A DNA stretch of 64,000 bases, from positions 124,001 through 188,000 of IMG/VR virus record IMGVR_UViG_3300020477_000990, one strand, 5' to 3'. The position numbers and the translations under genes are program-made. Below the pieces are notes generated by a model. The model saw only the letters and a list, made by a program, of their open reading frames with translations, ran no database searches and was not told where the DNA came from. Positions 4,170 to 62,038 of the stretch are shown piece by piece (positions within the stretch are counted from its first letter, which is position 1; each line of letters opens with the position of its first letter).

Positions 4170-4198
4170 TATAATAGCATAGGTTTCTATATTGTCAA
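4170..4198 (-). promoter_or_regulatory. Leftward sigma70 promoter with 12-bp operator, no downstream ORF
   Basis: Minus strand TTGACA-atATAGAAACCTATgc-TATTAT. Confidence 0.7.
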
Positions 4199-4221
4199 GA
4201 GGTTAATTTAAATATTTTTGG

Positions 4222-4249
4222 TTGACACATTGCGTAACCGTGCTACAAT
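4222..4249 (+). promoter_or_regulatory. Early sigma70 promoter
   Basis: TTGACA 4222-4227, 16 nt, TGcTACAAT ending 4249. Confidence 0.75.
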
Positions 4250-4322
4250 AAAGAATGAGCCTGTTGTAATGAATCGATAGGTATACTTAGATGAAGCAGG
4301 CTCATTTAAATAGAAAGGAAAT

Positions 4323-4700
4323 ATGTCAAATATAAGAATAGCTTACTACAGTCACAGCGAAACACCTATATCAACACTTACTAATTGTCCAGGAGATGAT
4401 TTAGTTAAGGTAGCTAGAATGTTAGAAACAACTGCGCCAACGTGGGAAGATGCTAAGAAGTATGTACACTTAACGCAACACACGTTGCAAGAACACTATG
4501 GTGTAGATGGTTATGGTGATCCTTTATGTACTAGAATAAGTGGTGTAAAGAATAAAGAAAACTTAATTGGTTTGTTTATTCATATGAGATCTAAATGGCA
4601 CTTTAGTGATAATGGTATTGATTGGATCCCAACTGAAGAAGAATTTCCAGTCGATTCTACCGAGCCTTATAAAGTTGTTAACGGATTTGTTAACGTTTAA
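4323..4700 (+). CDS. Hypothetical early protein
   Basis: SD AGAAAGGA, promoter upstream, terminator downstream. Confidence 0.8.
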   Translation: MSNIRIAYYSHSETPISTLTNCPGDDLVKVARMLETTAPTWEDAKKYVHLTQHTLQEHYGVDGYGDPLCTRISGVKNKENLIGLFIHMRSKWHFSDNGIDWIPTEEEFPVDSTEPYKVVNGFVNV

Positions 4701-4715
4701 TTTAAATTAAAGAAA

Positions 4716-4752
4716 TAAAAAAGCCCCAATACTTTTAGTAAAGGGGCTTTCT
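4716..4752. terminator. Bidirectional intrinsic terminator
   Basis: A-tract, AAGCCCC/GGGGCTT stem, T-tract, between convergent genes. Confidence 0.8.
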
Positions 4753-4790
4753 CTTGTTTAACACAACGTTACAATTGTACGTAACGTGCT

Positions 4791-5399
4791 CTACGCAACT
4801 TTAGTTGCTGTAAACTTTACTAGTTCCGAGGCACAATGTTGCCAAAAGTCTCCATCCAAGTTAACATCATAATTTACTGTTTCCTCAGCCTGCATTCCCT
4901 GTTCGCTATATTCGAAGTCTAAATACTTCTCTAATAGCTTTCTATTAAAGTTACATTCTTCTTCCATGTACTTTAATAAATTTTCTGTAAACCCATCGTC
5001 CGTATAAATTAAGCCATCGCTTTCTTTACTCGGGTTCCTATTAATTAATGCAGAGGGATCGTCAACTCCATCATACCATGTGCCGTCTTTTCCGCTTCCG
5101 TCATAGTATGCATTACCCGTAAGTCCGCCACTCCAATATATGTCATCAGCATTCATTGTACTCCAATCTTTTTTGTCGTACATTTGTCTGCTGTGTTGCG
5201 CCATTAAAACGAGATTGCTAACTTTTACTCCTTTAACTACTCCCTTACTCCATATACTATCTCCGCTAGTCCAAATACGTTTGTTAACGTTTACATCAAA
5301 TCGTAACGTTTCATCGTCTTTATCGTATTCGTAATTAACGTTAGCATTCTGCAAAAATTTAATGCCTGCTTGTACTTCTGCTAATGTATACTTTGCCAT
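4791..5399 (-). CDS. Hypothetical acidic early protein
   Basis: SD AGAAAGGA; own promoter (TTGACA at 5451-5446). Confidence 0.8.
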   Translation of the reverse strand: MAKYTLAEVQAGIKFLQNANVNYEYDKDDETLRFDVNVNKRIWTSGDSIWSKGVVKGVKVSNLVLMAQHSRQMYDKKDWSTMNADDIYWSGGLTGNAYYDGSGKDGTWYDGVDDPSALINRNPSKESDGLIYTDDGFTENLLKYMEEECNFNRKLLEKYLDFEYSEQGMQAEETVNYDVNLDGDFWQHCASELVKFTATKVA

Positions 5400-5422
5400 T
5401 TGTTTCCTTTCTGTTATTGTTT

Positions 5423-5451
5423 AACTATAGCATATTTTCCTGTTTTGTCAA
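5423..5451 (-). promoter_or_regulatory. Early sigma70 promoter
   Basis: Minus strand TTGACAaaacaggaaaatatgcTATAGT. Confidence 0.7.
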
Positions 5452-5535
5452 GTCTTTATGCTATTAATTTAATGTTAGTAACAAACCTAAAACTATTACT
5501 AATATTATAAATGTTTTTTTATAGTACATAATTTA

Positions 5536-5712
5536 CTATAACATACGTATTGTAACTGTATAGTGTAATGTTGACTGCTTAATTACACTTATATTTTTAC
5601 TAGCTTTTACTATGTCCAATAGCTTTAGCCTTTTAACTTCCTCTTCGTCGTTGTCGTAAATTTTTACTGTAGGTTCGAATAGCTTATCCAAACTTTCTTT
5701 AACTTTTTTCAT
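5536..5712 (-). CDS. Small hypothetical protein (start MKKVKE)
   Basis: SD AAGGAG before ATG at 5712; promoter TTGACA at 5765-5760. Confidence 0.6.
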   Translation of the reverse strand: MKKVKESLDKLFEPTVKIYDNDEEEVKRLKLLDIVKASKNISVIKQSTLHYTVTIRML

Positions 5713-5833
5713 TACTGCTCCTTTTATTACTGTAACTACTGTAACATACATTGCTTGTTTGTCAAGTACTAAGGGGCCGCGTAAGTCATTGAAATCATTA
5801 CATTTTTTTGGCGTGTTTAGACTAAAATAATGG

Positions 5834-5863
5834 TTGACATTATAGGTTTCTATGCTAATATAA
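5834..5863 (+). promoter_or_regulatory. Early sigma70 promoter with 12-bp operator
   Basis: TTGACA 5834-5839; ATAGGTTTCTAT 5842-5853; TGcTAATAT. Confidence 0.75.
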
Positions 5864-5896
5864 TATTAATGTTTAACACTAAACGAAAGGACAAAT

Positions 5897-6508
5897 ATGC
5901 CAAATTGGTGTAATAATAATATAATAATAAAAGGCCCAAAGAAAAAGATAAAGGATCTAGAAGCGGCGGCTAAAGAAGGACAATTTTGTAATTGGTTAGT
6001 TGCTATGCCGAAGGTTTTAGAAGATACAACTGCTGACGGGACTGAAAAACCTAAACTTAAAAAAGCAACAGGTTTTAGTGATTGGTACGATTGGCGAGTT
6101 GCCAATTGGGGAACCAAATGGGATGTAGATGCTTACGAAGGTTCAATAAAAATCAAAGAAGAACTATTAGGCAAAGACAATGGTAAAGCAGAGTTATCAT
6201 TTGGCTTTGATAGTGCTTGGGCACCTCCATTAGAAGCAATAGCAACTTACCTAGAGAAGAACGATGATGTTTCTATGAAACTATGGTATTATGAACCAGG
6301 TTGCGACTTTGGTGGAGTTTGGGAAGACTTTAACGATGATTGTTGGCAAATATCAGAAGTTCAAGATAGTTTTTTAATTAACGATCCTGTAGGTAGAGAG
6401 TTTAACGATTACTTTGGACTATTAGAATCTAGGGAAGAGTGGAGAGCTGATGAGGAAAATGATCCTAAGTCAGTTGCTAAATGGAAGGCAGTTCAAGGTG
6501 CAGAATAA
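5897..6508 (+). CDS. DUF1281/YubB ferredoxin-like domain protein
   Basis: MPNWCNN start, WYDWRVANWGTKWD and FDSAWAPP motifs. Confidence 0.75.
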   Translation: MPNWCNNNIIIKGPKKKIKDLEAAAKEGQFCNWLVAMPKVLEDTTADGTEKPKLKKATGFSDWYDWRVANWGTKWDVDAYEGSIKIKEELLGKDNGKAELSFGFDSAWAPPLEAIATYLEKNDDVSMKLWYYEPGCDFGGVWEDFNDDCWQISEVQDSFLINDPVGREFNDYFGLLESREEWRADEENDPKSVAKWKAVQGAE

Positions 6509-7717: not shown

Positions 7718-7736
7718 ACATTGGGAAAATTAATGG

Positions 7737-7765
7737 TTGACAACATAGAAATCTATGCTATTGTT
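7737..7765 (+). promoter_or_regulatory. Early sigma70 promoter with 12-bp operator
   Basis: TTGACA 7737-7742; ATAGAAATCTAT 7745-7756; TGcTATTGT. Confidence 0.75.
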
Positions 7766-7787
7766 AATAATAACAAGAAAGGAAAAT

Positions 7788-7991
7788 ATGTTTAAAACAT
7801 TTTTTAATATATTAGCAACACTTTTAATTGCCGTTGGTTTAATTATGATGGCGGGTAGTGCTAACGATTGTGATGGCAAGTGTATGGAAACTGCTAATAC
7901 AATTACAGAGATGCTTATGTATGCAGGCATTGGCTTAACTTTTATGATATGCGGAAGTGCAATTTTAATTTCAAATAAGAGGGAGGCGTAA
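7788..7991 (+). CDS. Two-TM membrane protein with a Cys-pair loop
   Basis: SD GAAAGGA; two hydrophobic helices flanking NDCDGKC. Confidence 0.75.
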   Translation: MFKTFFNILATLLIAVGLIMMAGSANDCDGKCMETANTITEMLMYAGIGLTFMICGSAILISNKREA

Positions 7992-8885: not shown

Positions 8886-8910
8886 GCAAAACTGCGGTTC
8901 ATTTAGGGTC

Positions 8911-8940
8911 TTGACAGAATCCTATATTGTGCTATTATAA
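8911..8940 (+). promoter_or_regulatory. Early sigma70 promoter with operator overlapping -35
   Basis: TTGACA 8911-8916; ACAGAATCCTAT 8914-8925; TGcTATTAT. Confidence 0.75.
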
Positions 8941-8961: not shown

Positions 8962-9396
8962 ATGTCAAAAAAAGAATATAGCAAAGATAAGCCACACGCA
9001 GATATCGGCAAATCAAAATATAGAGTTAGACAACATTACAACGCATGGGTTGAATATGATGTTGTAGCGGATTCAAAAGAAGAAGCGGAAAGTGCCGTTT
9101 TAGAACACGGTGGTATTGAAAAAATAGAATGGCAAGAAGGTTATTACAAAGATGAACCTGTTGAAGTTTATTGCAACGATTATAATTGGGATAGCGATGC
9201 AGATAGAGAATATGAAAAGCATCCGTTCGTTAGAGAACAAAGAATAAAAAAGGTTGCAGAATGTATTCCATACGAAGATAGCGATAGTATAGATTATTCA
9301 GATCCAGATTGGTCTACAGATGAATATGAATGGAAAAAAGAAGAGATGGATACAGAAGCTGGTTATAACATTATAAAAGATAAGGCGGCGTTTTAA
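8962..9396 (+). CDS. Acidic protein, DpnD/PcfM-like motif
   Basis: YDVVADSKEEAESAV; SD GGAAGGA. Confidence 0.75.
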   Translation: MSKKEYSKDKPHADIGKSKYRVRQHYNAWVEYDVVADSKEEAESAVLEHGGIEKIEWQEGYYKDEPVEVYCNDYNWDSDADREYEKHPFVREQRIKKVAECIPYEDSDSIDYSDPDWSTDEYEWKKEEMDTEAGYNIIKDKAAF

Positions 9397-10046
9397 TGGA
9401 TAGAATGATTAGAAATATTGCAATAGCATTAATGGCTTTAATAATCGTTCTGTTCATTTTCGATCAGAAGGCTCATGCGGTAACATTAACTACACAAGCA
9501 AAACATATTTTAAAAAGTGAGTTAGCTAATCATGAAATTAATAATCCAGAACATATAAAGCAGGTAAAGTGTTTAGCAGAAAACATTTACTTTGAAGCAA
9601 GAGCTGAAAGTGATGTAGGTAAAGCGGCTGTTGGTAATGTAACCAAGAACAGAGTATTAGATAGTAGATGGCCATCAACTTATTGTGAAGTAGTGCATGA
9701 AGGACCTGTTAGAGAGTCTTGGAAGACTAGAGGTAAAGATGTTGCTCAAGAAGATAGAGTATTTTGGCCCATCAAACATAGATGTCAATTTAGTTGGTAT
9801 TGCGATGGTAAGAAAGATGTTATATGGGCTAACTATGAAAAGACAGGACAAACAATTGAAGGCAATGCAAGAGCTTGGAGAGATTCAATCGAACTTGCAA
9901 TTTATATTACTGGATATGGTAAAATGATTATAGACGATAATACACACGGAGCCGTGTTTTATTATAATCATAATTTAGTATATCCTAACTGGGCACCAAC
10001 AAAAGAATATATTGGGGTAACAGGTAACCATACATTTATGAAATAA
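9396..10046 (+). CDS. Cell wall hydrolase, SleB/Hydrolase_2 family, with N-terminal signal anchor
   Basis: CLAENIYFEARAE...AVGNVTKNRV...CQFSWYCDG...GNHTF. Confidence 0.9.
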   Translation: MDRMIRNIAIALMALIIVLFIFDQKAHAVTLTTQAKHILKSELANHEINNPEHIKQVKCLAENIYFEARAESDVGKAAVGNVTKNRVLDSRWPSTYCEVVHEGPVRESWKTRGKDVAQEDRVFWPIKHRCQFSWYCDGKKDVIWANYEKTGQTIEGNARAWRDSIELAIYITGYGKMIIDDNTHGAVFYYNHNLVYPNWAPTKEYIGVTGNHTFMK

Positions 10047-10339: not shown

Positions 10340-10367
10340 TTGACAAATGGCCGATCTGTGTTACAAT
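10340..10367 (+). promoter_or_regulatory. Early sigma70 promoter
   Basis: TTGACA 10340-10345; TACAAT 10362-10367. Confidence 0.7.
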
Positions 10368-10643: not shown

Positions 10644-10655
10644 ATTTAATTTAAG

Positions 10656-10684
10656 AAGCCCCTGAAATATGGGGCTTTTTTTAT
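10656..10684 (+). terminator. Intrinsic terminator
   Basis: AAGCCCC-tgaaatat-GGGGCTT then T-tract. Confidence 0.85.
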
Positions 10685-10686
10685 GG

Positions 10687-10715
10687 TTGACAATATAGAA
10701 ATCTATGCTACTATA
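10687..10715 (+). promoter_or_regulatory. Early sigma70 promoter with 12-bp operator
   Basis: TTGACA 10687-10692; ATAGAAATCTAT 10695-10706; TGcTACTAT. Confidence 0.75.
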
Positions 10716-10735: not shown

Positions 10736-11014
10736 ATGTCAAAAGAAATGAAGAAGGGCGATAAGCCATACGGACATCCATTACCATTCGATTGTGTAGT
10801 GTTAGAAGATCCTGAAGTAATAGCGAATCCATATAGTGGTGAGAAGATAAAACTTCAACCAGATGCGGTTGCCGTTTATGATTCAATTAAAGGTGCTGAA
10901 TTAATGGCACAAGGAATTGATGATGGAGGCCATCCTTTATGGAGACAAGTTAGAGCTGGATTGGATTGGTTTAGAAAACATTATGCAAAAGAATATATGG
11001 TGTTATTAGACTAA
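10736..11014 (+). CDS. Hypothetical phage protein (NPYSGE...AVYDSIKG...YMVLLD type)
   Basis: SD AAAGGGA before ATG 10736. Confidence 0.75.
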   Translation: MSKEMKKGDKPYGHPLPFDCVVLEDPEVIANPYSGEKIKLQPDAVAVYDSIKGAELMAQGIDDGGHPLWRQVRAGLDWFRKHYAKEYMVLLD

Positions 11015-11362: not shown

Positions 11363-11393
11363 TTGACAGAATCCTATAATATGCTATTATAAT
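11363..11393 (+). promoter_or_regulatory. Early sigma70 promoter with operator overlapping -35
   Basis: TTGACA 11363-11368; ACAGAATCCTAT 11366-11377; TGcTATTATAAT. Confidence 0.75.
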
Positions 11394-11414: not shown

Positions 11415-12497
11415 ATGATGCAAAAAATTAAACCCCTATTATGGATATTCTTTGGAGTATATTTCTTTGTATGGGGACTAGCAGGATGTAATAATGATGC
11501 TCGTGCAAATGAGAAGCATGACTTATTAAAAACGAATAACGGAATTAGTAGTAAAGATACTACAATTAAAGGTTGGAAGTTTAGAGCAAATAAACATTTA
11601 AAGAAACATATTAAAAAGGGAGACCTTTTATATACATATGATGTAGTTTATGCTAAAGATGGATTTCCAGTTAGATGGGGAGACACATCACAAAAATTTG
11701 AATTAAGAGGTTTACAATGTACATCAGGAGGTTCTGGGGATTGTAAAAGAGAGAATGGTGATTCAAGTTCTAGAATAGAAACTCCAGTTAAAGATTCTTA
11801 CCATATGGGAAACAATTCCGAGTATTGGATTACTTGGTCTATATATGTTCCTGAAGATTATGTATTAATTCATAAAAAGTCTGGGTTAGGTCAATTCCAC
11901 TCTAACCAAGGACCTATGCCATCACAATGGGAATTTAAATTATATAATGATTATAAGCAAAGTGGTTTCCAATTATGGAATTCTGTATCAGGGGATATAG
12001 AAAAAAGATATGATGCTTGTTTTGGTTCAAGCAATTCTTTATCTAAGATGTCTGACAAGAGTGCTAAATTTCATTGGTGTGAAAAACAATATTGGAAATA
12101 TAATTTAATGTCTCTAGAAGAATTTTATTCACATAGAGGTAAATGGATTGACTTTATTGTAAATGTTAAATGGAGTAATAAAGATAAAGGACACTTTAAA
12201 CTTTGGATTAATGGTAAACAAGTAGTTAACCATCAAGGTAAAACAATGCACGATTCAAAACAATATGGATCAAAGTTTAAAGCAACATTCACTTATGGTA
12301 TGTACAACGATAATAAAAAAGGTATATGGGATGTCACAAAAGAAAGATTTGAACAGCCACTAACAATATATTGGGATGAAGTTTGGAGAATGAAGTCTTG
12401 TAAGAAACTAGACCTTGAAAGACTTGGATACTCATGTGATGCTTTAGACAATGGTGGTAAAGAACATCCAGACCTAATCCATGATAAGAGAAGTTAA
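11415..12497 (+). CDS. Polysaccharide lyase-like (heparin lyase I / beta-jelly-roll) lipoprotein
   Basis: Lipobox LAGC; SRIE, EYWITWSIYVP, GQFH, KWIDFIVNVKWS...GHFKLWING, YGMY, IYWDEV motifs. Confidence 0.75.
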   Translation: MMQKIKPLLWIFFGVYFFVWGLAGCNNDARANEKHDLLKTNNGISSKDTTIKGWKFRANKHLKKHIKKGDLLYTYDVVYAKDGFPVRWGDTSQKFELRGLQCTSGGSGDCKRENGDSSSRIETPVKDSYHMGNNSEYWITWSIYVPEDYVLIHKKSGLGQFHSNQGPMPSQWEFKLYNDYKQSGFQLWNSVSGDIEKRYDACFGSSNSLSKMSDKSAKFHWCEKQYWKYNLMSLEEFYSHRGKWIDFIVNVKWSNKDKGHFKLWINGKQVVNHQGKTMHDSKQYGSKFKATFTYGMYNDNKKGIWDVTKERFEQPLTIYWDEVWRMKSCKKLDLERLGYSCDALDNGGKEHPDLIHDKRS

Positions 12498-12768: not shown

Positions 12769-13002
12769 ATGAAAAAAATATTACCAATAATTGCAATAGG
12801 CTTTTTATTAAGTGCCTGTAGTGCAACAACTGGTGCTATTACTAAAAAGGATGTCACGACGCTAGGCGGATGTGTTGCTGGTGGTGTTGCTGGATCTCAA
12901 GTAGGTAGTGGTAGTGGTAAGAAATGGGCGATCATCACAGGGACGGTTCTGGGATGTCACGGTGGCTCAATTCTAGGTAAGAAAATCGATCCTGACAACT
13001 AA
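12769..13002 (+). CDS. Glycine-zipper 2TM lipoprotein
   Basis: Lipobox LSAC; GGCVAGGVAGSQVGSGSG glycine zipper; SD AGGAGAGG. Confidence 0.8.
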   Translation: MKKILPIIAIGFLLSACSATTGAITKKDVTTLGGCVAGGVAGSQVGSGSGKKWAIITGTVLGCHGGSILGKKIDPDN

Positions 13003-13006: not shown

Positions 13007-13035
13007 TTGACAGATCACAGAAGTATGTTATATTA
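13007..13035 (+). promoter_or_regulatory. Early sigma70 promoter
   Basis: TTGACA 13007-13012; TGtTATATT. Confidence 0.7.
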
Positions 13036-14232: not shown

Positions 14233-14261
14233 TTGACATAATAGAATCCTATGTTATATTA
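14233..14261 (+). promoter_or_regulatory. Early sigma70 promoter with 12-bp operator
   Basis: TTGACA 14233-14238; ATAGAATCCTAT 14241-14252; TGtTATATT. Confidence 0.75.
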
Positions 14262-14291: not shown

Positions 14292-14642
14292 ATGAATAAA
14301 GTTCGTGGAATAGTCAACTCAGAAGATCCTAATATTCGTATACACAATGAAGGTATATCAGCGGCCAAGAAAGCGGCTAAAGAATATATGGATAAACACG
14401 GTGAGCCAATGTACTGTGGCTTTGCTTGGGTTAATATTAAACCTGGTACTAGCCAATTTGCTAGATCATTAAAGAAGCATAACCTTGTAGATACTACAAG
14501 TTACTATGGTGGTTATGATATATGGGATCCAGCAGGGTTCAATACACAATCAATGGATATAAAAGAAGTAGGTGCAGAGGCTTATGCTAATGTACTTGAG
14601 TCTTATGGTATTAATGCATCAATGATGTCAAGAGCTGATTAA
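14292..14642 (+). CDS. Conserved-type phage hypothetical protein (CGFAWV motif)
   Basis: CGFAWVNIKP...QSMDIKE motif; SD AAAGGA. Confidence 0.75.
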   Translation: MNKVRGIVNSEDPNIRIHNEGISAAKKAAKEYMDKHGEPMYCGFAWVNIKPGTSQFARSLKKHNLVDTTSYYGGYDIWDPAGFNTQSMDIKEVGAEAYANVLESYGINASMMSRAD

Positions 14643-14652: not shown

Positions 14653-14940
14653 ATGAGTAAACATAAGGTAATAGATCTAATTAAGCAAGTTAAGTCACTA
14701 ACTACTAGAGATGACTTAATTGCTATATCTAATGCGGCACACACTAGATTAGATTGGGTTAATAGATGTAAGGCACAGGACTTTACTAGAGGTGATAGAG
14801 TATCATTTACATCTAGTAGATCAGGCCGTACAATGAAGGGTACTGTAAGGAAGGTTAATATCAAGTATGTTATAGTAGACATAGATGGTACTAGCATGAG
14901 CTACAGAGTACCTGGTTCATATTTGAAATTAGTAGCATAA
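14653..14940 (+). CDS. SH3/KOW-like small protein
   Basis: FTRGDRVSF...GTVRKVNIKYVIV; SD AAGGAGG. Confidence 0.7.
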   Translation: MSKHKVIDLIKQVKSLTTRDDLIAISNAAHTRLDWVNRCKAQDFTRGDRVSFTSSRSGRTMKGTVRKVNIKYVIVDIDGTSMSYRVPGSYLKLVA

Positions 14941-14980
14941 GAGCTATACAGTAGTACTGTTGTATAGAGCTACAATACTA

Positions 14981-15004
14981 AAGGCCCTACGGGGCCTTTT
15001 TTTA
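14981..15004 (+). terminator. Intrinsic terminator closing the early module
   Basis: AGGCCC-tacg-GGGCCT then long T-tract. Confidence 0.85.
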
Positions 15005-16165
15005 TGAAATTTATTTCGTAAAAGAAAAATAAAAAAATAAAATAATTTTCCCCTGGCCGACCATGTAAATATTCGCACCCTAAAATCGAGGAGACCTAGG
15101 CTATGACGGACGTTATATTTTTTGGGTAAAAAAGGAGAGGTGTAATATAAAGGGCGGTGCTAAAAAAATTGCAGTAAAAAATTTTTAGTTAAACATATAG
15201 AAATCTGTAATGTAGTATTTTTAATAGAAAACAACCCATATATCCAATATACCCCGCGGCAAGAACAATGATGAACTCAACAGAAACGACAGTAGATCAA
15301 CTGTTATAAAGATTGTTGTCCCCCATTCTTATGAAGCAGTAAAGAACTGTGAACTCACAATGAGCTACACAATGAATCCACGATGAAGCATTGTGATGAT
15401 GCTTAAAAATTAAAATGCTATAAAAAATAGCATTTATAACAATACCTCGCGGGAGAGGTATAACTTAATGGATCACTATGACGCTAAAATGGAAAACTGT
15501 GGTAACTGTTAAGGGCTCAACAATTATAGGTTTCTAACCTACAAATATCATGTAGCCAAATATAAACCACCATACAAGTGCTATTAAAATCAACACTATT
15601 GTTGCTATGTCATCACGCATAACACTATTTAAGCAGAGGCATTAACAAACAGGACACACGGGCTTTAAAATAGGATTAAAGGCTCTTATATACGTAGTAC
15701 TAGCTATGCTTATGAACTGTACGCAAATATGCGTTAGGCCTGTTTGTAGCATACTGCTACGGTGAAGTGATTAGTCTACGGAGTGTAATAAACTGTAACA
15801 ATCTTAATAGCTATTAGGCATGGTGGGGCATGGTGGTTGCTGTAGTTAAGAGTCTTCTGCGAGAGCTGGAAAAGGAACGTAAGTTCCGTTCCACTAGCGA
15901 GCAGATATATCCGTATGAACGAGCTATATTATATCCTTTTAATAAAGTTTATTAGATTTTGTAATTTTGGTCGCAAATACAAGCAAATACAATTATAACC
16001 GCCGCACATACAAACTATACAATATAAACCCCACATACACCGCAAATACAATATAATACTATATACCCCGCACATACAAAAAATCGCAAATACAAACTAT
16101 GCAATATAAACACCCCTACAAAAAAATTTTCGCATACACATAAAATACAATATACGCCCCTTGCG
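15005..16165. other. Second large non-coding element (candidate terminus / pac / origin)
   Basis: No ORF of 60 aa or more in about 1.2 kb; many short inverted repeats; repeat array at right end. Confidence 0.7.
15973..16150 (+). repeat. GCA(A/C)ATACAA repeat array, strongly A/C-skewed
   Basis: Exact copies at 15973, 15983, 16004, 16042, 16070, 16086 plus degenerate copies. Confidence 0.9.
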
Positions 16166-16176
16166 TAAATACTATT

Positions 16177-17409: not shown

Positions 17410-17440
17410 TGTATTAACCAAGTATATAATGAAAGGCTTT

Positions 17441-17827
17441 ATGACAGAAGAAGCAAATAAAATAGAAGTATTAGTAAAACAGTTAGGGCAACTAACAGTA
17501 GTAGAAGCAGGTCAACTTGCAAAACAATTAGAAAAAGAATGGGACCTAGATTTAGATTCATTAACAGCAGGTGCTGGTGCTCAAGCGGCGGCTCCAGTAG
17601 ATGAAGGCAAAACAGAATTTGATGTATTACTTACAGGCTTTGACGATAGTAAAAAAATTGCAGTACTTAAAGCAATTAAAACAATTAAAGATATAGGCTT
17701 AATGGACGCAAAAAAATTTGTGGAAGGAGATTTACCGGCAACAGTAGCAGACGAAGTTTCAAAAGAACAAGCTGAAAAATTTAAAAAAGAAATTGAAGAT
17801 GCTGGTGGACAGGTACAATTAAAATAA
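17441..17827 (+). CDS. rplL: 50S ribosomal protein bL12 (L7/L12), full length
   Basis: NTD LGQLTVVEAGQLAKQLEKEW, Ala-rich hinge, CTD KTEFDVLL...KKIAVLKAI...GLMDAKKFVE...AEKFKKEIEDAGGQVQLK; SD AAAGG before ATG 17441. Confidence 0.95.
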   Translation: MTEEANKIEVLVKQLGQLTVVEAGQLAKQLEKEWDLDLDSLTAGAGAQAAAPVDEGKTEFDVLLTGFDDSKKIAVLKAIKTIKDIGLMDAKKFVEGDLPATVADEVSKEQAEKFKKEIEDAGGQVQLK

Positions 17828-22195: not shown

Positions 22196-22227
22196 AACTA
22201 TATTTAACATAGCACAAAAAGGATAAA

Positions 22228-22629
22228 ATGTCTATAGAAGAAAAATATAAGAGCTATCAAGAACAATTAGAAGTACTTACTGAAAATATGGACAAATATC
22301 AGTACCTAATTAACATTGGGTCAAAAAATTCGATGCCAGAAGAATATAAATTAGACTCATTTAAAGTACATGGCTGTATGAGTCAAGTATGGCTAGTACC
22401 AAAATATAATGAAGGTAAAATAACTTTTATGGCTGACTCTGATGCACATATTACTAGAGGAGTAGTTACTATGGTAGCAGATATTTTTAGTGGGTCAACA
22501 GCAAAACAAATACAAGAAACAAATATTGATACTATAATTAATGGACTAGGTTTATTAAGTATTTTATCGCCCAATCGACGTAATGGTGCTTATAATATGT
22601 TTCATAAGGTAAAAGATTATGCCAACTAA
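22228..22629 (+). CDS. sufE: SufE family Fe-S sulfur-transfer protein
   Basis: KVHGCMSQVWL, ADSDAHITRG, LSPNRRNG. Confidence 0.9.
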   Translation: MSIEEKYKSYQEQLEVLTENMDKYQYLINIGSKNSMPEEYKLDSFKVHGCMSQVWLVPKYNEGKITFMADSDAHITRGVVTMVADIFSGSTAKQIQETNIDTIINGLGLLSILSPNRRNGAYNMFHKVKDYAN

Positions 22630-56650: not shown

Positions 56651-57685
56651 ATGGAAATAGATACAAGTACAAAAGTTGATGATAAATCTAAGATAAAAAT
56701 ATCTGATATTGATATATTTTACCTATCATATGATGAGCCTAATAAACAAGAGCATTGGGCAGATATCAAAAGTAAAGTTCCATGGGCTAAATGGGTAGAT
56801 GGCGTTGAAGGATCAGATGCGGCACACAAAGCCTGTGCTAATAGAAGTGATACTACTAGGTTTATTACTGTAGATGGCGATAATAAGTTAGTTAATTATG
56901 AAAAATTAATTGATTTAGAACTTGACTTTTCTGATTATGAAAATTTAAATTTAGAAGAGTCTGTAGTATCTTTTACAGGTTATAATAACATTAACGGATT
57001 AATGTATGGTAATGGTGGTATTAAGTGCTGGCCAAAACAAGCAGTTCTTGATATGAAAACACACGAAGCGGCTGAGTCAGAAGGATCAGCTGTAGACTTC
57101 TGTTGGGATATGAATTATATACAATTAAACGAATGCTTTTCGCACGTATATAATAACGCAACACCGCATCAAGCCTGGCGTGCCGGATTTAGAGAAGGTG
57201 TAAAAATGTCTTTAGACAGAGGATTTAAAGTTGATTCAGTTAACTTTGAAAAAAATATCCATGACAAAAATTATCATAGACTTTTAATTTGGGCGTCTGT
57301 AGGACGAAATGTTGATAATGGTTTATGGGCAATATACGGAACAAGACTTGGTTGCTATATGACAAATTGTACTGATTGGGATTTTGTTAATGTAAGAGAT
57401 TTTGAATGGCTTAATAAATTTTGGAAAGAAGAAGTTAAACCACAATTTACAGGTAATGACCAAATGTGTCATTACGAAAAGTATCAATGGGATAAAGAAA
57501 AACTTTTAAAAGAGTCTCTTAGACTTGGTAAAGAATTAAGAAGCAAACTTGGATTACAATTAGGTGATTTAGGACCAGATGATTCAGCATTCTTTAAAAA
57601 AGTATATTGGAATCCGCCTCGCTCTGGAGCATTTGTAACAGAAAAAGGACAAGACGGAATTACTCGTTATAAAGTATTGAAATGA
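56651..57685 (+). CDS. GT-A fold glycosyltransferase-like protein
   Basis: DIFYLSYDEP...AHKACA...FITVDGDN (DxD)...YGNGGIKCW...AWRAGFREG. Confidence 0.65.
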   Translation: MEIDTSTKVDDKSKIKISDIDIFYLSYDEPNKQEHWADIKSKVPWAKWVDGVEGSDAAHKACANRSDTTRFITVDGDNKLVNYEKLIDLELDFSDYENLNLEESVVSFTGYNNINGLMYGNGGIKCWPKQAVLDMKTHEAAESEGSAVDFCWDMNYIQLNECFSHVYNNATPHQAWRAGFREGVKMSLDRGFKVDSVNFEKNIHDKNYHRLLIWASVGRNVDNGLWAIYGTRLGCYMTNCTDWDFVNVRDFEWLNKFWKEEVKPQFTGNDQMCHYEKYQWDKEKLLKESLRLGKELRSKLGLQLGDLGPDDSAFFKKVYWNPPRSGAFVTEKGQDGITRYKVLK

Positions 57686-59088
57686 CCGATGAAGTACGCA
57701 AGATCAAACAAACTAGAGATAGATTAAATGCAGTATCGCCTAGCTTCTGTACAGCAAAATGGTTACAAGTTACCATGCACTTACAGAATGGCCATACGCA
57801 TTCTTGCCACCATCCACAAACACACAAAATACCGTTAGAAGAATTACGTACAAACCCAACAGCACTTCATAATACAGAGCTAAAGAAAAAGCAACGTAGA
57901 ATGATGTTAGATGGTACACGTCCAAAAGAGTGCCAGTATTGTTGGAACGTAGAAGATTTAGGTGAGGATAGAATTAGCGATCGATACCTCAAATCCCATG
58001 ACACTTGGGCTCTTCCTCACCTAGACACAATAGCAAAGTCTGATTGGAAAGCAAACGTTAATCCAAGATATGTTGAAGTATCTTTTTCAAATGTTTGTAA
58101 TTTAAAATGTTCTTATTGTTCTCCAGCATTTAGTTCTAAATGGGTTGAAGAAATTGTACAACATGGTCCTTATCCAACATCAGATAAATTTAATAACTTA
58201 GATTGGTTACAGCAACAAAACAAAATGCCAATACCACATAGAGAATCAAATCCTTATGTAGAAGCATTTTGGAAATGGTTTCCAGATTTATATAAAACGT
58301 TAGAAGTATTTAGAATAACAGGTGGAGAACCTTTAATGTCTAAAGATACTTTTAAAGTTTTTGATTATATAATTGACAACCCAAATCCTAATTTAGAATT
58401 AAGTATTAATTCTAATGCCTGTGTGCCAGATGTTTTATTTGACAAATATATTGAAAAAATGAAACGTATTACTGGAGAAAACAAAGTTGGTAGAACAAGA
58501 TTATATACGTCAGTTGACACTTGGGGTGTACAAGCAGAATATATTAGAGATGGATTTAATTATTACCAATGGCACGACAATATTGAAAAAGTATTAAAAG
58601 AATTACCTTTAACAAAAGTGACTGTTATGTGTACAACTAATTTATTAAGTATGCCAAACTTTCATCATTTAGTAGATGACATTTATCATTGGAAAAATGA
58701 TTTTTATTCAAATGAACGCAGGGTTCCTATTACATTAGATATGGCTATATTAAGGCATCCGGTACACCAAAGTGCTGTAATATTACCACCAGAATATGCT
58801 AGTATGATGAATCCAGCATTAGCTTATATGGAGAGTCATGCAGAAACGCATAGCAATCCATATAAAGGATTCTTTGATTTTGAAATTGAAAAAATGAAAA
58901 GGTTTATTGAATATGTTAAAGCAGGACCCAATGAAGCTGAACGTATTAATTTAGATGTGTCTAGAAAAGACTTTAAATACTTTATAGATGAACATGATAG
59001 AAGACGAGGTACAAATTTTAAAAAGACATTTCCTGAGTTAGTAGAATTTTATAACTTATGTGGACAAAGTATTAAAGAGTTAGCATGA
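57682..59088 (+). CDS. Radical SAM protein with N-terminal Cys cluster
   Basis: CNLKCSYC; FCTAKW...SCHHP...ECQYCW; ITGGEP. Confidence 0.9.
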   Translation: MTDEVRKIKQTRDRLNAVSPSFCTAKWLQVTMHLQNGHTHSCHHPQTHKIPLEELRTNPTALHNTELKKKQRRMMLDGTRPKECQYCWNVEDLGEDRISDRYLKSHDTWALPHLDTIAKSDWKANVNPRYVEVSFSNVCNLKCSYCSPAFSSKWVEEIVQHGPYPTSDKFNNLDWLQQQNKMPIPHRESNPYVEAFWKWFPDLYKTLEVFRITGGEPLMSKDTFKVFDYIIDNPNPNLELSINSNACVPDVLFDKYIEKMKRITGENKVGRTRLYTSVDTWGVQAEYIRDGFNYYQWHDNIEKVLKELPLTKVTVMCTTNLLSMPNFHHLVDDIYHWKNDFYSNERRVPITLDMAILRHPVHQSAVILPPEYASMMNPALAYMESHAETHSNPYKGFFDFEIEKMKRFIEYVKAGPNEAERINLDVSRKDFKYFIDEHDRRRGTNFKKTFPELVEFYNLCGQSIKELA

Positions 59089-60608
59089 CAAAGAAACGTA
59101 AAGACGAAACATATCAACAGTATAGGGATAGGGTAATTAACCCAATATCGTCATCATGGTGTGGCGCCAAATGGTATAATGCTACTATATGGTTGAATAG
59201 CGGTACTACTGCAAGTTGTCATCACCCTCCTGCACATAAAGTACCATTAGAAGAAGTATTAGCAAATCCAAAAGCAATACATAATACCAAATATAAAAAA
59301 ATGGTACGTAAACAAATGCAATGTGGTGAAAGACCTAAAGAGTGTGAGTATTGTTGGAAAGTTGAGGACTTAGGTCCTAATAACGTTTCTGATAGAGTTT
59401 ATAAAACAGTTATATATACAGAAGATCAAATAGCCAAAGCAAGTAAAATGGATTGGCAAGATGATGTTGATTTACATACATTAGAAATTGCTTTTGATGC
59501 CAATTGTAATTATGCTTGTTCTTATTGCAATGCTAGTTTCTCAACAACATGGCAAAATGATATTAAGAAAAATGGAGCATATCAAAATTTAGTTAGTGAT
59601 GGTGCAAGAGCATTTCAACAAGATGGTAAATGGGCAATGCCATATGGAAAGAAAAATATAGGTAATCCTTATGTAGATGCTTTCTTTAAATGGTGGAAGT
59701 CAGACTTACATAAAACTTTACAAGAGTTAAGAGTAACAGGTGGTGAAGCAACAATGTCACAGGACTTTTGGCGTTTACTAGAATGGTGGCAAACTAATAA
59801 AGATTGTGAAGTACGTTTAGCAGTTAATTCTAATTTAGGAACTAAACCAGAACTTATTGATAAGTTAGCACGAGAAAGTCATGCATTTAAAGAGTTTGAT
59901 TTATATACTTCTAATGAATCGTTTGGCGGCCATGCAGAATATATTAGAGATGGATTAATATGGAATACTTGGTTAGGTAATATTCACAAAATGATGGAAC
60001 AAGGTAATGTACGTGAATTACATATGATGATGACTATTAATGCATTGTGCTTGTTTAGTATTACAGAATTTATGGACGAAATGATTAAACTAAAAGAACG
60101 TTATGGACAATTTGCACCTGCAATGAGTTTTAATATATTACGTTTTCCTAGTTTTCAATCAGCAGTAACATTGCCACAAGATATTAAAAAACGTTTAGCT
60201 GACAATTTAGAAAATTGGTTAGAAAATGTTGGAAAGAAACACGAATTGTTTTTTGATATGGAACAAGATGGTGTAAGTAGATTAATAAATTATTTACGTG
60301 AAGTAGAAGTAGGTCACCAAGGTACTTCATCTATAGAAACACGTGAAAGAGATTTTAAATCATTTTATAGTCAATATGATATCAGAAGAAACAAATCATT
60401 TGAAAACACATTTCCTGAAGATGTTGTTAAATGGTATAAATCAATACCAGATACAAATTTACAAAAGTTACAAGGTATAGTTGATGGTGATTCAACTAAA
60501 GGTAATATGATGAAAAAAGAATTAGAGGAAAGAGCTAAAACAGAAGGCTGGGTTATGAATCCGCAAGGCCCTAACCCAGGATCACAAGAATATAAAGAAA
60601 AAGTATGA
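59085..60608 (+). CDS. Radical SAM protein, tandem paralog of 57682
   Basis: CNYACSYC; WCGAKW...SCHHP...ECEYCW; VTGGEA. Confidence 0.9.
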   Translation: MTKKRKDETYQQYRDRVINPISSSWCGAKWYNATIWLNSGTTASCHHPPAHKVPLEEVLANPKAIHNTKYKKMVRKQMQCGERPKECEYCWKVEDLGPNNVSDRVYKTVIYTEDQIAKASKMDWQDDVDLHTLEIAFDANCNYACSYCNASFSTTWQNDIKKNGAYQNLVSDGARAFQQDGKWAMPYGKKNIGNPYVDAFFKWWKSDLHKTLQELRVTGGEATMSQDFWRLLEWWQTNKDCEVRLAVNSNLGTKPELIDKLARESHAFKEFDLYTSNESFGGHAEYIRDGLIWNTWLGNIHKMMEQGNVRELHMMMTINALCLFSITEFMDEMIKLKERYGQFAPAMSFNILRFPSFQSAVTLPQDIKKRLADNLENWLENVGKKHELFFDMEQDGVSRLINYLREVEVGHQGTSSIETRERDFKSFYSQYDIRRNKSFENTFPEDVVKWYKSIPDTNLQKLQGIVDGDSTKGNMMKKELEERAKTEGWVMNPQGPNPGSQEYKEKV

Positions 60609-60952
60609 GTTACATGAAAAACAAACACCCCCCATATCCTGATCCAAAAAGATTAAGGGAGCTATCAAAATTAATTGACAGATATCGTGAAAATATATTT
60701 TTAGTTTGCTTAACTGAAGGCATAACAAAAAAAGATATAATATCATACTGCACAAGATTATGTGCAATAAGGCATCTAGACGAATTATTAAATAATCCTT
60801 GTCCAATGAGATTAATATCTGAAATAGAAGATTTAGCTGAATATAAAAGATTATGCCCACATCAACAAAAACGAGTTGATAAAATAAAATACGGGTCAAC
60901 TGATGCAGAATGGCCTAAGCATTGGGGTTATTGGTCATATGATGGAGCATAA
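60605..60952 (+). CDS. Hypothetical Cys-containing protein
   Basis: Packed ORF. Confidence 0.6.
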   Translation: MSYMKNKHPPYPDPKRLRELSKLIDRYRENIFLVCLTEGITKKDIISYCTRLCAIRHLDELLNNPCPMRLISEIEDLAEYKRLCPHQQKRVDKIKYGSTDAEWPKHWGYWSYDGA

Positions 60953-61577
60953 AAATTTAGCAATATGTGGCTGTAGTTGGGCTAGTGATTTTAATAGCTC
61001 AACGTATTCAAATGATGAAGTTACAAACAATTCTCAATTATGGCAATATAATTTAGGTTATAAGCCTACAATTTATGCAAGGCCAGGAGCAACTAATTTA
61101 AAAATATATACGCAAGTAGATGAAGCAATTGAAAATGGATTTGATAGTTGTTTAGTATTATTAACATCACCTACTAGAATTAATATTGCTTGGAAAGATA
61201 CAGATGGGTGGAAAGCTGACAGTAAGTTTAGATGGGGCCGAACTGATGTTGTAAACAAATATGCTACATCTGAAATTAAAGAATATATTGGAAAATACTT
61301 TAATGAAGAGATAGAAGTATTAAATTCATTCATTATTACTGAAGCAATTTATTATAAATTAAAAGAAACTGGAAAACCTTTTTATATTTTTACCAATGCA
61401 TTTACAGATTATATTCATAAAGACTGGAAAGTTTTTAATAAAAAAGAAATAATTCAAGATGGCCCGATTAATTTAATTAAAGATAATAATTATGTAGGAG
61501 ATAATGTTCCTAATCATTTATCCTTACTTGGACAAGATAAAGCAAAAAAACTTGTAATCGCAACAATTTACCCGTAA
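60942..61577 (+). CDS. SGNH/GDSL-like protein
   Basis: ICGCSWAS, ARPGATN, NH. Confidence 0.65.
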   Translation: MEHKNLAICGCSWASDFNSSTYSNDEVTNNSQLWQYNLGYKPTIYARPGATNLKIYTQVDEAIENGFDSCLVLLTSPTRINIAWKDTDGWKADSKFRWGRTDVVNKYATSEIKEYIGKYFNEEIEVLNSFIITEAIYYKLKETGKPFYIFTNAFTDYIHKDWKVFNKKEIIQDGPINLIKDNNYVGDNVPNHLSLLGQDKAKKLVIATIYP

Positions 61578-61598
61578 TCGGCCTAAAAAAATAAAAAG

Positions 61599-61629
61599 AC
61601 TTGACAAGATCAAGTTCTGAATATAATAT
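61599..61629 (+). promoter_or_regulatory. sigma70 promoter with inverted repeat over -35
   Basis: TTGACA 61601-61606; ACTTGA-caaga-TCAAGT 61599-61615. Confidence 0.65.
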
Positions 61630-61664
61630 AGTAATTATTAAACTTAACTACCTAGGAGATTAAA

Positions 61665-61928
61665 ATGGGATTAAGCAACATAAAAGTAAAAGGTTCTTCA
61701 CAGTATAAGTTAGGAACTCAAAAACAGAGAATCCTACAATACTATTGGGGTACTGGTACTACAGTAACTACAAAAAATTTGGTATCAAGATATAAAATCA
61801 TGAAACCAACTGCAAGAATTTGTGAGTTGAGACAAGATGGTTTTGATATTAGATCTTTACGATTTGTTACTAGAGATACGAAAAGAAGTGCGGTAAAATA
61901 CCGTATTATGCAACGTAAAGCCGCTTAA
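61665..61928 (+). CDS. Winged helix-turn-helix DNA-binding protein
   Basis: TQKQRIL...PTARICELRQDGFDI; basic; SD AGGAG. Confidence 0.75.
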   Translation: MGLSNIKVKGSSQYKLGTQKQRILQYYWGTGTTVTTKNLVSRYKIMKPTARICELRQDGFDIRSLRFVTRDTKRSAVKYRIMQRKAA

Positions 61929-61958
61929 TTATAGATAATTAGGCCTAATTACACATAT

Positions 61959-61995
61959 AAAAGCCTGTAAGTCATTGATTTTACAGGCTTTTTTT
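61959..61995 (+). terminator. Intrinsic terminator with GTCATTGATT loop
   Basis: AAGCCTGTAA/TTACAGGCTT stem then T-tract. Confidence 0.8.
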
Positions 61996-62009
61996 GTGGC
62001 TTTTTTTGG

Positions 62010-62038
62010 TTGACAGATTTCTATAGTATGCTATTATA
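62010..62038 (+). promoter_or_regulatory. sigma70 promoter with operator overlapping -35
   Basis: TTGACA 62010-62015; ACAGATTTCTAT 62013-62024; TGcTATTAT. Confidence 0.75.

What the first reader, a model, noticed from the sequence alone, without database searches (positions are those of the whole stretch)
4179..62024. A 12-bp pseudo-palindromic operator AYAG-N4-CTRT shared by at least 8 promoters in two fixed registers
Copies: ATAGGTTTCTAT 4179 and 5842; ATAGAAATCTAT 7745 and 10695; ATAGAATCCTAT 14241 (all 2 nt downstream of TTGACA); ACAGAATCCTAT 8914 and 11366; ACAGATTTCTAT 62013 (overlapping the ACA of TTGACA). Two more lie in the second non-coding block (ATAGAAATCTGT 15197, ATAGGTTTCTAA 15526). 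Arms are conserved in either orientation while the centre varies, as expected for a dimeric regulator. This defines an apparently undescribed phage regulon that also touches both non-coding elements.
Basis: partly seen in the sequence, partly recalled or inferred. Interest (0 to 1): 0.72.

Follow-up and report, generated by a model that had tools for sequence, protein, structure and literature searches.

The report
Conserved dyad inside phage early promoters
A 12-base mirror-symmetric motif sits between the -35 and -10 boxes of about half the strong early promoters of an uncultured marine jumbo phage, and it is conserved like a protein-binding site, most likely an operator for an unidentified regulator, although no binding has been shown.

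Summary
The window lies in a 328-kb marine jumbo myovirus of the Rak2/PA5oct-like, host-RNAP-dependent group. That genome has 25 canonical early promoters (TTGACA, 16-bp spacer, TGn, TAnnnT). Eleven of them (8 in the window) carry AYAGR-WW-YCTAT in the spacer; 0.03-0.04 are expected by chance.

Only two registers occur:
- Class B starts at the ACA of TTGACA (-31 to -20).
- Class A starts 2 nt after TTGACA (-26 to -15), and its CTAT arm overlaps the TRTG/extended -10 element.

In orthologous promoters of related contigs the arms never change (0/186 pairwise differences). The centre changes at 0.30 per site and the flanks at about 0.5.

Sister lineages have the same promoter architecture but no motif. 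Permuted and shifted control patterns are about as frequent in unrelated phages. The motif is therefore not a property of the promoter type. It is a clade-specific element under selection.

Three further copies flank a tRNA-Leu(CAG) gene that has no -35 box.

The promoters are also PeSL-like terminator-promoter cassettes, which duplicate and shuffle.

Best reading: an operator for a dimeric DNA-binding protein, probably a repressor. The binder is unknown. The only recognisable candidate, the HTH_39 winged helix at 61665-61928, is untested. The claimed link to the second non-coding block is weak.

The parts
4171..4198 (-). Class A promoter (TTGACAatATAGAAACCTATGCTATTAT). The dyad is at 4179-4190. 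It points into the first non-coding block and stands back-to-back with the motif-less promoter at 4222-4249.
   Evidence: The orthologue in G001 keeps ATAG/CTAT while the centre and the 2-nt linker differ (set S7).
5834..5861 (+). Class A promoter, dyad at 5842-5853. It drives 5897-6508 (DUF1281_C-like protein). It is preceded by an AAGTCATTGA hairpin and T-run at 5783.
   Evidence: The G001 orthologue retains the dyad.
7737..7764 (+). Class A promoter, dyad at 7745-7756. It drives the small membrane ORF 7788-7991.
   Evidence: The promoter at the same locus in G001 is class B, so the class has switched at one locus (set S8).
8911..8938 (+). Class B promoter, dyad at 8914-8925. It drives 8962-9396 and the cell-wall hydrolase gene 9396-10046.
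   Evidence: The hydrolase orthologues in G001 and G004/G005 also sit behind class B promoters.
10687..10714 (+). Class A promoter, dyad at 10695-10706. It lies directly after the intrinsic terminator at 10653-10680 and drives 10736-11014.
11363..11390 (+). Class B promoter, dyad at 11366-11377. It drives 11415-12497 (polysaccharide-lyase-like protein). It is a near-duplicate of the promoter at 8911.
14233..14260 (+). Class A promoter, dyad at 14241-14252. It drives 14292-14642 and 14653-14940.
62010..62037 (+). Class B promoter, dyad at 62013-62024. It follows an AAGTCATTGA-containing terminator hairpin and drives the glycine-zipper lipoprotein gene 62064-62636.
   Evidence: The orthologous promoter is conserved in L043, L057 and L066.
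15197..15208 (+). Degenerate class-A-like copy (TTAAACatATAGAAATCTGTaaTGTAGT) in the second non-coding block. It is probably decayed or weak.
   Evidence: No comparator sequence was available.
61665..61928 (+). HTH_39 winged-helix protein (87 aa, pI 10.9). It is the only small DNA-binding regulator recognisable in the genome and therefore only a candidate binder.
   Evidence: It is 88-90% identical in L043, L057 and L066, where the neighbouring genes are 70-78% identical.
4222..4249 (+). Canonical promoter without the dyad, used as an internal control. Others of this kind are at 5424-5451(-), 5738-5765(-), 10340-10367 and 13007-13034.

Best explanation
The 12-bp dyad AYAGR-WW-YCTAT is a cis-regulatory site, an operator. 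It is recognised by a dimeric sequence-specific DNA-binding protein that is specific to this phage clade, most likely phage-encoded. The site lies within the 16-bp spacer of a subset of host-sigma70-type early promoters.

Bound there, at -31 to -20 or at -26 to -15, the protein would compete with sigma region 4 or with sigma region 3 (the extended -10 contact). It would therefore turn down or shut off these very strong promoters. This would give one group of early and accessory genes a common control: MoxR ATPase, DUF2201/VWA protein, cell-wall hydrolase, polysaccharide-lyase-like protein, outer-membrane lipoprotein, several ORFans, a non-coding transcript and a tRNA-Leu(CAG).

The two registers are the two places where the promoter consensus already supplies most of one arm: ACA from TTGACA, and TAT from TRTG. 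Those are the easiest places for a site to arise, and the places where it overlaps polymerase contacts most.

The promoters themselves are PeSL-like terminator-promoter cassettes that duplicate and shuffle, which spreads the site.

Shown here: the element, its registers, its selective conservation and its clade specificity. Inferred: that a protein binds it, the sign of the regulation, and the identity of the binder.
For: 1. Eleven of 25 canonical promoters carry the dyad, against about 0.035 expected. Only two registers occur.
2. Arms are invariant and the centre is variable. In 21 distinct class B promoters, G-28 and CTATA (-23 to -19) are 21/21, while -27 to -24 and -18/-17 vary. In 7 class A promoters, ATAG and CTAT are 7/7 with a variable centre and linker.
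3. In five orthologous class B sets the pairwise differences per site are 0/31 (G-28), 0/155 (CTATA), 0.30 (centre), 0.44 (-18/-17), 0.11 (-10 hexamer) and 0.46-0.55 (flanks).
4. The same positions relative to the hexamers carry different conserved bases in the two classes. Class B has T at -20 in 21/21, whereas motif-less promoters have A at -20 in 25/27. The constraint therefore does not come from polymerase.
5. Sister lineages G006, G007 and G010 have the same TTGACA-N13-TGn-TAnnnT architecture but 0/12, 0/16 and 1/23 motif copies. Unbiased sampling of orthologues of two downstream genes finds the motif only in the closest relatives.
6. Permuted and shifted control patterns give 30 and 20 stretches in IMG/VR. 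The real pattern gives 39, of which about 24 are relatives of this phage.
7. Three ATAG-N4-CTAT copies flank tRNA-Leu(CAG), where there is no -35 box (window-corrected P about 3e-5). One copy upstream of the tRNA is kept in G001.
8. The core survives a register switch, both within one cassette family and at an orthologous locus.
Against: - No binding protein has been identified. HTH_3, RHH_1, HTH_17, HU and sigma70_r2 families are absent, and the lone HTH_39 protein is untested. The complex prediction was not run by the tool.
- In each register 3 of the 4 arm bases on one side are dictated by the promoter, so the evidence for dyad symmetry rests on fewer free positions than it seems.
- A at -19 is invariant in class B, and the palindrome does not explain it.
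- The motif is not enriched outside promoters, apart from the tRNA locus.
- Several promoters are obvious recent duplicates (8911/11363, 54025/57547, 7737/10687), and four share an upstream AAGTCATTGA box. Part of the similarity is therefore descent.
- Most close relatives were first found by searching for the motif, although the two gene-based searches recovered the same relatives.
- There are no expression data with 5' ends.
Confidence: 0.45

Rival explanations
1. No dedicated binding protein exists. The two spacer types are signatures of two sub-families of PeSL-like terminator-promoter cassettes. They spread by duplication and recombination, and are kept similar by gene conversion and by selection for promoter strength or DNA shape.
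For: - Near-identical promoter pairs occur within the genome.
- The 10-mer AAGTCATTGA occurs only four times in 328 kb, each time 40-50 nt upstream of a motif promoter inside a hairpin and T-run.
- Gene order differs between G000 and G001 at promoter boundaries, and one locus has switched class.
- PeSLs with near-consensus sigma70 promoters are documented in T4-type phages (PMC2839356, PMC4122927).
- One arm in each class is promoter-encoded.
Against: - Drift or conversion does not predict arms with 0/186 differences next to a centre at 0.30 per site across orthologues.
- The centres are not homogenised within a genome.
- Class B's T at -20 opposes the general preference for A at -20.
- Sister lineages with the same cassette-rich early region have unconstrained spacers.
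- Copies at the tRNA-Leu locus lie outside any sigma70 promoter.
Confidence: 0.27
2. The dyad binds a factor that acts positively or as a timing switch rather than as a repressor. For example, the factor could keep these promoters in use after host sigma70 -35 recognition is altered, or recruit polymerase at -35-less sites.
For: Copies upstream of tRNA-Leu(CAG) lack a -35 box. At genome 116429 and at G001 60113 and 34538 the copies abut a T4-type late box, TATAAATA. That late box is the most enriched intergenic 8-mer, so a T4-like temporal programme exists.
Against: - The promoters already have a perfect -35 and an extended -10, so they need no activator.
- Two registers half a helical turn apart are unfavourable for a face-specific activator contact.
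- The spacer is 16 bp, not the 19-20 bp of MerR-type activation.
- Only 1 of 29 TATAAATA sites in the genome carries the dyad.
Confidence: 0.13
3. The dyad is a recombination site, the target of a site-specific recombinase or nuclease, that mobilises promoter-gene cassettes.
For: Rearrangement breakpoints and a class switch coincide with promoters. The PeSL literature leaves site-specific recombination open (PMC4122927).
Against: - Twelve base pairs is short for known recombinase sites.
- No recombinant junctions were seen. The one apparent junction in read data is explained by the paralogous promoter outside the laid stretch.
- No recombinase was sought or found next to the sites.
Confidence: 0.07

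Closest known systems
PeSLs (promoter-early stem-loop cassettes) of T4-type phages (PMC2839356, PMC4122927)
   Same: Repeated near-consensus sigma70 early promoters, often preceded by a terminator stem-loop. They cluster in hyperplastic regions full of ORFans and are associated with gene shuffling between relatives. The phage here also has a T4-like late box (TATAAATA).
   Different: No dyad element in the spacer is described in the PeSL passages I read. Here half the cassettes carry one, in two registers, under stronger constraint than the -10 hexamer. Only some promoters have a clear upstream stem-loop.
Dispersed operator regulons of phage repressors, such as the L5/TipsytheTRex repressor with more than 20 operator/stoperator sites (PMC9283540)
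   Same: One short site repeated many times across a phage genome. Contacted positions are invariant and the middle of the site is variable. Some sites overlap promoters.
   Different: The L5-type sites are asymmetric 13-mers bound by a monomer, depend on orientation, and are frequent in intergenic spaces outside promoters in a temperate phage. Here the site is symmetric, almost confined to promoter spacers, and the phage shows no sign of lysogeny.
Classical dyad operators that overlap the promoter core (LexA, TetR, phage 434 and lambda type; named from general knowledge)
   Same: Dyad symmetry, conserved arms with a degenerate centre, and a position that excludes RNA polymerase.
   Different: The 12-bp site has arm centres only about 8 bp apart, which is shorter than typical helix-turn-helix dimer sites. 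The cognate protein is unknown.
MerR-type spacer operators and T4 MotA-box middle promoters (general knowledge)
   Same: A factor site located between or over the -35 and -10 elements.
   Different: MerR promoters have 19-20-bp spacers, whereas this one is 16 bp. MotA boxes replace the -35 element, whereas here the -35 is a perfect TTGACA.

Membership tests
sigma70-type extended -10 promoter | -35 hexamer close to TTGACA, a 16-18-bp spacer, TGn, and a -10 TAnnnT | tested here: met
   All 11 motif promoters have TTGACA, a 16-bp spacer, TG at -15/-14 and TAnnnT.
sigma70-type extended -10 promoter | Transcription start mapped downstream of the -10 | tested here: inconclusive
   Metatranscriptome contigs cover the region in patches without 5'-end information, and DNA carry-over is not excluded.
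PeSL cassette (T4-type phages) | Near-consensus early promoter repeated many times in hyperplastic, ORFan-rich regions | tested here: met
   Thirteen canonical promoters lie in window 4-14 kb among small ORFs that are mostly without Pfam or PHROG hits.
PeSL cassette (T4-type phages) | Stem-loop or terminator immediately upstream of the promoter | tested here: inconclusive
   Clear for 10687, 62010, 54025, 57547 and 5834 (hairpin and T-run, four of them with the AAGTCATTGA box). Not evident for 7737, 8911 and 14233.
PeSL cassette (T4-type phages) | Association with indels and rearrangements between close relatives | tested here: met
   G000 and G001 differ in gene order and content at promoter boundaries, and one locus has switched class.
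PeSL cassette (T4-type phages) | Mini-circle formation by recombination between cassettes | not testable with these tools
   This needs inverse PCR or deep sequencing of infected cells.
Dyad operator of a dimeric repressor | Inverted-repeat arms conserved, centre degenerate | tested here: met
   The position tables and the orthologue substitution counts show it.
Dyad operator of a dimeric repressor | Overlap with RNA polymerase recognition elements | tested here: met
   Class B overlaps the ACA of the -35 box. Class A overlaps the T-17/A-16/T-15 of the TRTG element.
Dyad operator of a dimeric repressor | A cognate DNA-binding protein encoded nearby or in the genome | tested here: inconclusive
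   Only one HTH_39 winged-helix protein was found. HTH_3, RHH_1, HTH_17, HU and sigma70_r2 were not found. HTH_39 is present in G000, G004/G005, G008 and G010 and absent from SCTP-2, PA5oct, Atu_ph07, G006 and G007. That distribution is suggestive only.
Dyad operator of a dimeric repressor | Demonstrated binding and a regulatory effect | not testable with these tools
   The protein-DNA job was not folded by the tool.
MerR-type spacer operator | Over-long spacer of 19-20 bp with the dyad centred in it | tested here: not met
   The spacer is 16 bp in all cases.
T4 MotA-box middle promoter | -35 element replaced by a box centred at -30 | tested here: not met
   A perfect TTGACA is present in all cases.
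L5-type stoperator | Asymmetric, orientation-dependent site that is frequent in intergenic spaces outside promoters | tested here: not met
   The site is symmetric. There is no excess outside promoters except at the tRNA-Leu locus.

The most novel reading that the evidence does not exclude
The dyad is both a transcriptional operator and the crossover or recognition site of a cassette-mobilising system. In that case the phage's early 'morons' would be exchanged as promoter-gene units at a defined 12-bp site, an integron-like arrangement inside a lytic jumbo phage. This would explain the register switches and the promoter-bounded rearrangements.
Probability: 0.07. Interest if true: 0.8.

Novelty: new variant of a known kind. 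Interest (0 to 1): 0.45.

Why it matters
Transcriptional control in jumbo phages that depend on the host polymerase is almost unexplored. For the Rak2/PA5oct-like group only -35/-10 boxes have been reported (PMC7318152).

A clade-specific operator embedded in half of the early promoters would imply a phage-encoded circuit that times or limits a defined set of early accessory genes, including envelope-acting proteins and a tRNA, in an abundant uncultured marine phage.

It also gives a concrete, testable handle: a 12-mer, 11 target promoters, and internal control promoters that differ only in the spacer. The promoters could be useful as strong, possibly switchable parts.

The case also illustrates how operator sites can arise where the promoter consensus already provides one arm.

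Tried and rejected
- Chance is rejected.
- A general feature of strong phage promoters is rejected. Permuted (TATCA) and 1-nt-shifted control patterns give 30 and 20 stretches in IMG/VR. The real pattern gives 39, and only about 15 of those are unrelated to this phage.
- A feature intrinsic to polymerase in this promoter architecture is rejected. Sister lineages G006, G007 and G010, and more distant orthologous promoters, lack it. The cultured relatives SCTP-2, PA5oct and Atu_ph07 show no such spacers.
- Known RNA families: none in the window or in the two non-coding blocks. There are no tRNAs in the window.
- Megablast against GenBank phages found no match. A blastn of a related contig's class B promoter (L008) also found none.
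- RNA evidence: metatranscriptome contigs overlap the region but give no 5' ends.
- An apparent recombinant junction at 10715 in DNA run X1 is most simply the paralogous minus-strand promoter at 4198. That promoter lay outside the stretch I laid, so I do not count the junction as recombination.
- Complex prediction with two copies of the winged-helix protein plus promoter DNA was not folded by the tool. It is no evidence either way.
- The winged-helix fold model (pLDDT 76) gives only generic wHTH matches such as Stf76, PadR and MarR, with E >= 0.12. Its homologues are only close relatives.
- A weak CC/C bias in the spacers of G010, which also has an HTH_39 gene, was considered as a second operator type. 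It is too weak to claim.
Full report
**Context.** The window is bases 124001-188000 of a 328,149-bp IMG/VR virus record with terminal repeats and 31.8% G+C. Its baseplate wedge protein is 38-44% identical to those of Salicola phage SCTP-2, Agrobacterium phage Atu_ph07 and Pseudomonas phage PA5oct. These belong to the Rak2-like group of jumbo myoviruses, and PA5oct is reported to rely on host RNA polymerase and to have TTGAC/TATAATA promoters (PMC7318152). The DNA occurs in many marine metagenomes. The most enriched intergenic 8-mers are TATAAATA(C), which is the T4-type late box, and GGTTGACA. The phage therefore appears to run a T4-like programme, with host-sigma70 early promoters and a separate late class.

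**The observation.** Read in promoter orientation they fall into two classes.
- Class A is TTGACA-nn-ATAGRWWYCTAT-G-Y-TAnnnT, at window 4198(-), 5834, 7737, 10687 and 14233.
- Class B is TTG-ACAGRWWYCTAT-A-nn-RTG-C-TATnnT, at window 8911, 11363 and 62010, plus genome 54025, 57547 and 92566 outside the window.

All have a perfect -35, a 16-bp spacer and an extended -10. The loose 12-mer is not enriched genome-wide: there are 27 hits, and the number outside promoters is no higher than chance. However, 11 of the 25 canonical promoters carry it, against 0.034-0.037 expected and a maximum of 2 in 20,000 simulations. Site 15197 is a degenerate class-A-like copy. Site 15526 does not fit the consensus. 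Sites 4934 and 62154 are coding-sequence hits that look like chance.

**How much of the dyad is free.** With the -10 hexamer at -12 to -7, class B occupies -31 to -20. Its left arm, ACAG, is ACA of the -35 box plus one free G. Class A occupies -26 to -15, and the TAT of its right arm is the T-R-T of the TRTG/-16 element, which most promoters here have anyway. Each class therefore has one largely free arm: YCTAT(A) in class B and ATAGR in class A. The free arm of A is the exact reverse complement of the free arm of B, and the 10-nt core AGRWWYCTAT is shared, for example AGAATCCTAT in 8914, 11366 and 14241. Offsets 5, 6 and 7 would also fit a 16-bp spacer, but only offsets 3 and 8 are used, in this genome and in its relatives. 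Those are the two positions at which the promoter consensus donates an arm and at which a bound protein would overlap sigma contacts most.

**Evidence for selection.** Pattern scans and gene-based searches of IMG/VR recovered related contigs with 65-85% nucleotide identity (G001-G005, L006, L014, L043, L062 and others). These give 21 distinct class B and 7 class A promoters.
- In class B, G-28 and C-23, T-22, A-21, T-20, A-19 are invariant, while -27 to -24 (R W W Y) and -18/-17 vary.
- In class A, ATAG and CTAT are invariant, while the centre and the two linker bases vary.
- In five orthologous class B sets the pairwise differences per site are 0/31 (G-28), 0/155 (CTATA), 0.30 (centre), 0.44 (-18/-17), 0.11 (-10 hexamer) and 0.46-0.55 (flanks).

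The free arm is thus better conserved than the -10 box. Motif-less canonical promoters prefer A at -20 (25/27), whereas class B always has T there. The constraint is therefore additional to, and partly opposed to, the general promoter preference.

**Clade specificity.** I used three controls.
1. In IMG/VR the class B pattern gives 39 stretches, about 24 from relatives of this phage. A permuted arm (TATCA) gives 30 and a 1-nt shift gives 20, so unrelated phages hold it only at background level.
2. I sampled orthologues of two downstream genes without reference to the motif. The MoxR-like ATPase gene is preceded by a sigma70-like promoter in 55 of 61 distinct contigs, but the dyad is present only in the three closest (89-90% amino-acid identity). 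For the DUF1281-like gene, only G001 keeps it among 59 contigs.
3. Sister lineages G006 (242 kb), G007 and G010 have clusters of 12-23 promoters with exactly the same TTGACA-N13-TGn-TAnnnT architecture, but 0/12, 0/16 and 1/23 dyads, and low spacer information.

SCTP-2, PA5oct and Atu_ph07 show nothing comparable. The dyad is therefore not a property of this promoter type or, as far as can be judged, of the polymerase. It is an addition specific to one clade.

**Copies outside sigma70 promoters.** Three ATAG-N4-CTAT copies lie within 150 bp around a tRNA-Leu(CAG) gene at genome 116279, 116300 and 116429. This is 7.6 kb upstream of the window and has no TTGACA. P(>=3 in 200 bp) is 8e-9, or about 3e-5 after correcting for windows. 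In G001 the orthologous tRNA is preceded by ATAGAAACCTATAAATAAT. In G000 116429, G001 60113 and G001 34538/G003 9599 the dyad abuts a TATAAATA late box. This supports a discrete element that can function away from the -35/-10 frame, and it leaves room for a role other than simple repression.

**Cassette behaviour.** Several promoters are near-duplicates (8911/11363, 54025/57547, 7737/10687). The 10-mer AAGTCATTGA occurs only four times in the genome, each time 40-50 nt upstream of a motif promoter and inside a hairpin and T-run; three of these promoters are class B and one is class A. Terminators directly precede 10687 and 62010. Between G000 and G001, gene order and content change at promoter boundaries, and the promoter in front of the 7788 ORF is class A in G000 but class B in G001. 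This matches the PeSL concept described for T4-type phages (PMC2839356, PMC4122927). It means that part of the similarity is descent. It does not explain invariant arms beside a drifting centre, and the survival of the core through register switches argues that the core itself is what is selected.

**Controlled genes.** The genes behind motif promoters are:
- a MoxR-like AAA ATPase and a DUF2201 metallopeptidase/VWA protein (outside the window);
- a DUF1281_C-like protein;
- a small membrane ORF;
- an operon with a Hydrolase_2 cell-wall hydrolase;
- a polysaccharide-lyase-like protein;
- a glycine-zipper/17-kDa-antigen-type lipoprotein;
- ORFans;
- the minus-strand transcript entering the first non-coding block.

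None of these looks like a regulator.

**Candidate binder.** Six-frame searches of the whole genome found no HTH_3, RHH_1, HTH_17, HU or sigma70_r2 domain, and a single HTH_39 winged helix at 61665-61928. That protein is basic (pI 10.9). It is 88-90% identical in L043, L057 and L066, where its neighbours are 70-78% identical, and it sits directly upstream of the class B promoter at 62010. Its model is a generic winged helix. HTH_39 is present in G000, G004/G005, G008 and G010. It was not found in SCTP-2, PA5oct and Atu_ph07 (complete genomes without the dyad), nor in G006 and G007 (partial). The protein-DNA prediction was not run by the tool. A host factor cannot be excluded. The host is unknown; the outer-membrane-type lipoproteins point to a Gram-negative host, and the phage tmRNA tag ADENLALAA resembles, as I recall them, the tags of gamma-proteobacteria.

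**Verdict.** The operator interpretation is the best-supported reading (about 0.45, or about 0.6 counting the variant with positive control). A purely cassette-descent explanation (about 0.27) is the main rival. In kind this is familiar: an operator inside promoters, carried on PeSL-like cassettes. In detail it is new: a clade-specific 12-bp dyad in two promoter-anchored registers in a lytic marine jumbo phage. Interest is moderate.

Noticed in passing
window 2733-4160: A non-coding block with about 40% G+C in a 32% genome. It holds tandem GACCCCGCTGT x3 (3220-3270) and about ten CTCAAAG-type 9-mers (3650-3735). Convergent promoters at 3446(+) and 4198(-) face into it. There is no Rfam match, and parts are conserved in G001. 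It could be an iteron or origin-like region, or structured RNAs.
   Followed up: partly
window 14941-16176: The largest non-coding stretch of the whole genome (1236 bp). It starts after a strong terminator at 14980-14999 and holds CAAATACAA/ACATACAA-type repeats at 15960-16140. There is no Rfam match and no comparator sequence was found.
   Followed up: partly
genome 116197-116645 (7.4-7.8 kb upstream of the window; locus L040 4198-4646): tRNA-Leu(CAG) is flanked by three ATAG-N4-CTAT copies with no -35 box. The downstream copy overlaps a T4-type late box (ATAGAGTTCTATAAATAAT). G001 has ATAGAAACCTATAAATAAT upstream of its orthologous tRNA.
   Followed up: partly
window 5783, 61969; genome 53973, 57506: The 10-mer AAGTCATTGA occurs only four times in 328 kb. 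Each copy lies inside a hairpin and T-run 40-50 nt upstream of a dyad-bearing promoter, forming a composite terminator-promoter cassette.
   Followed up: yes
window 17429-17827: A phage-encoded ribosomal protein bL12 (L7/L12): Pfam Ribosomal_L12 at 1e-21 plus the N-terminal dimerisation domain.
   Followed up: partly
window 21014-24611 and 57682-60608: At least four radical-SAM genes, two of them with SPASM domains, lie in two groups. This could point to peptide or nucleic-acid modification chemistry.
   Followed up: no
window 38297-50257: A single 3986-aa ORF lies directly after the 1316-aa baseplate wedge gene. PA5oct and Atu_ph07 have giant genes in the same position.
   Followed up: no
genome 94952-95270 (locus L039 4953-5271): A phage-encoded tmRNA with tag peptide ADENLALAA, with several tRNA genes nearby. 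It may give a clue to a gamma-proteobacterial host.
   Followed up: no
window 12769-13002 and 62064-62636: Two glycine-zipper/17-kDa-antigen-type lipoprotein genes. The second lies behind a class B promoter. They could be envelope-acting or superinfection-exclusion-type early genes.
   Followed up: no
G010 (loci L287-L290): A 43-50% G+C relative has about 20 promoters of the same architecture with a weak bias of its own in the spacer (C at -26, -25 and -23). It also encodes an HTH_39 protein 36% identical to the one here. The bias is too weak to call a second operator type.
   Followed up: partly
window 4222-4249; SCTP-2 140695, 141169, 141406: The motif-less promoter at 4222 begins TTGACACATTG. 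That start is conserved in G001 and recurs in three tandem SCTP-2 promoters (two reading TTGACACATTG, the third TTGACACAATG), so it may be another conserved spacer type.
   Followed up: no
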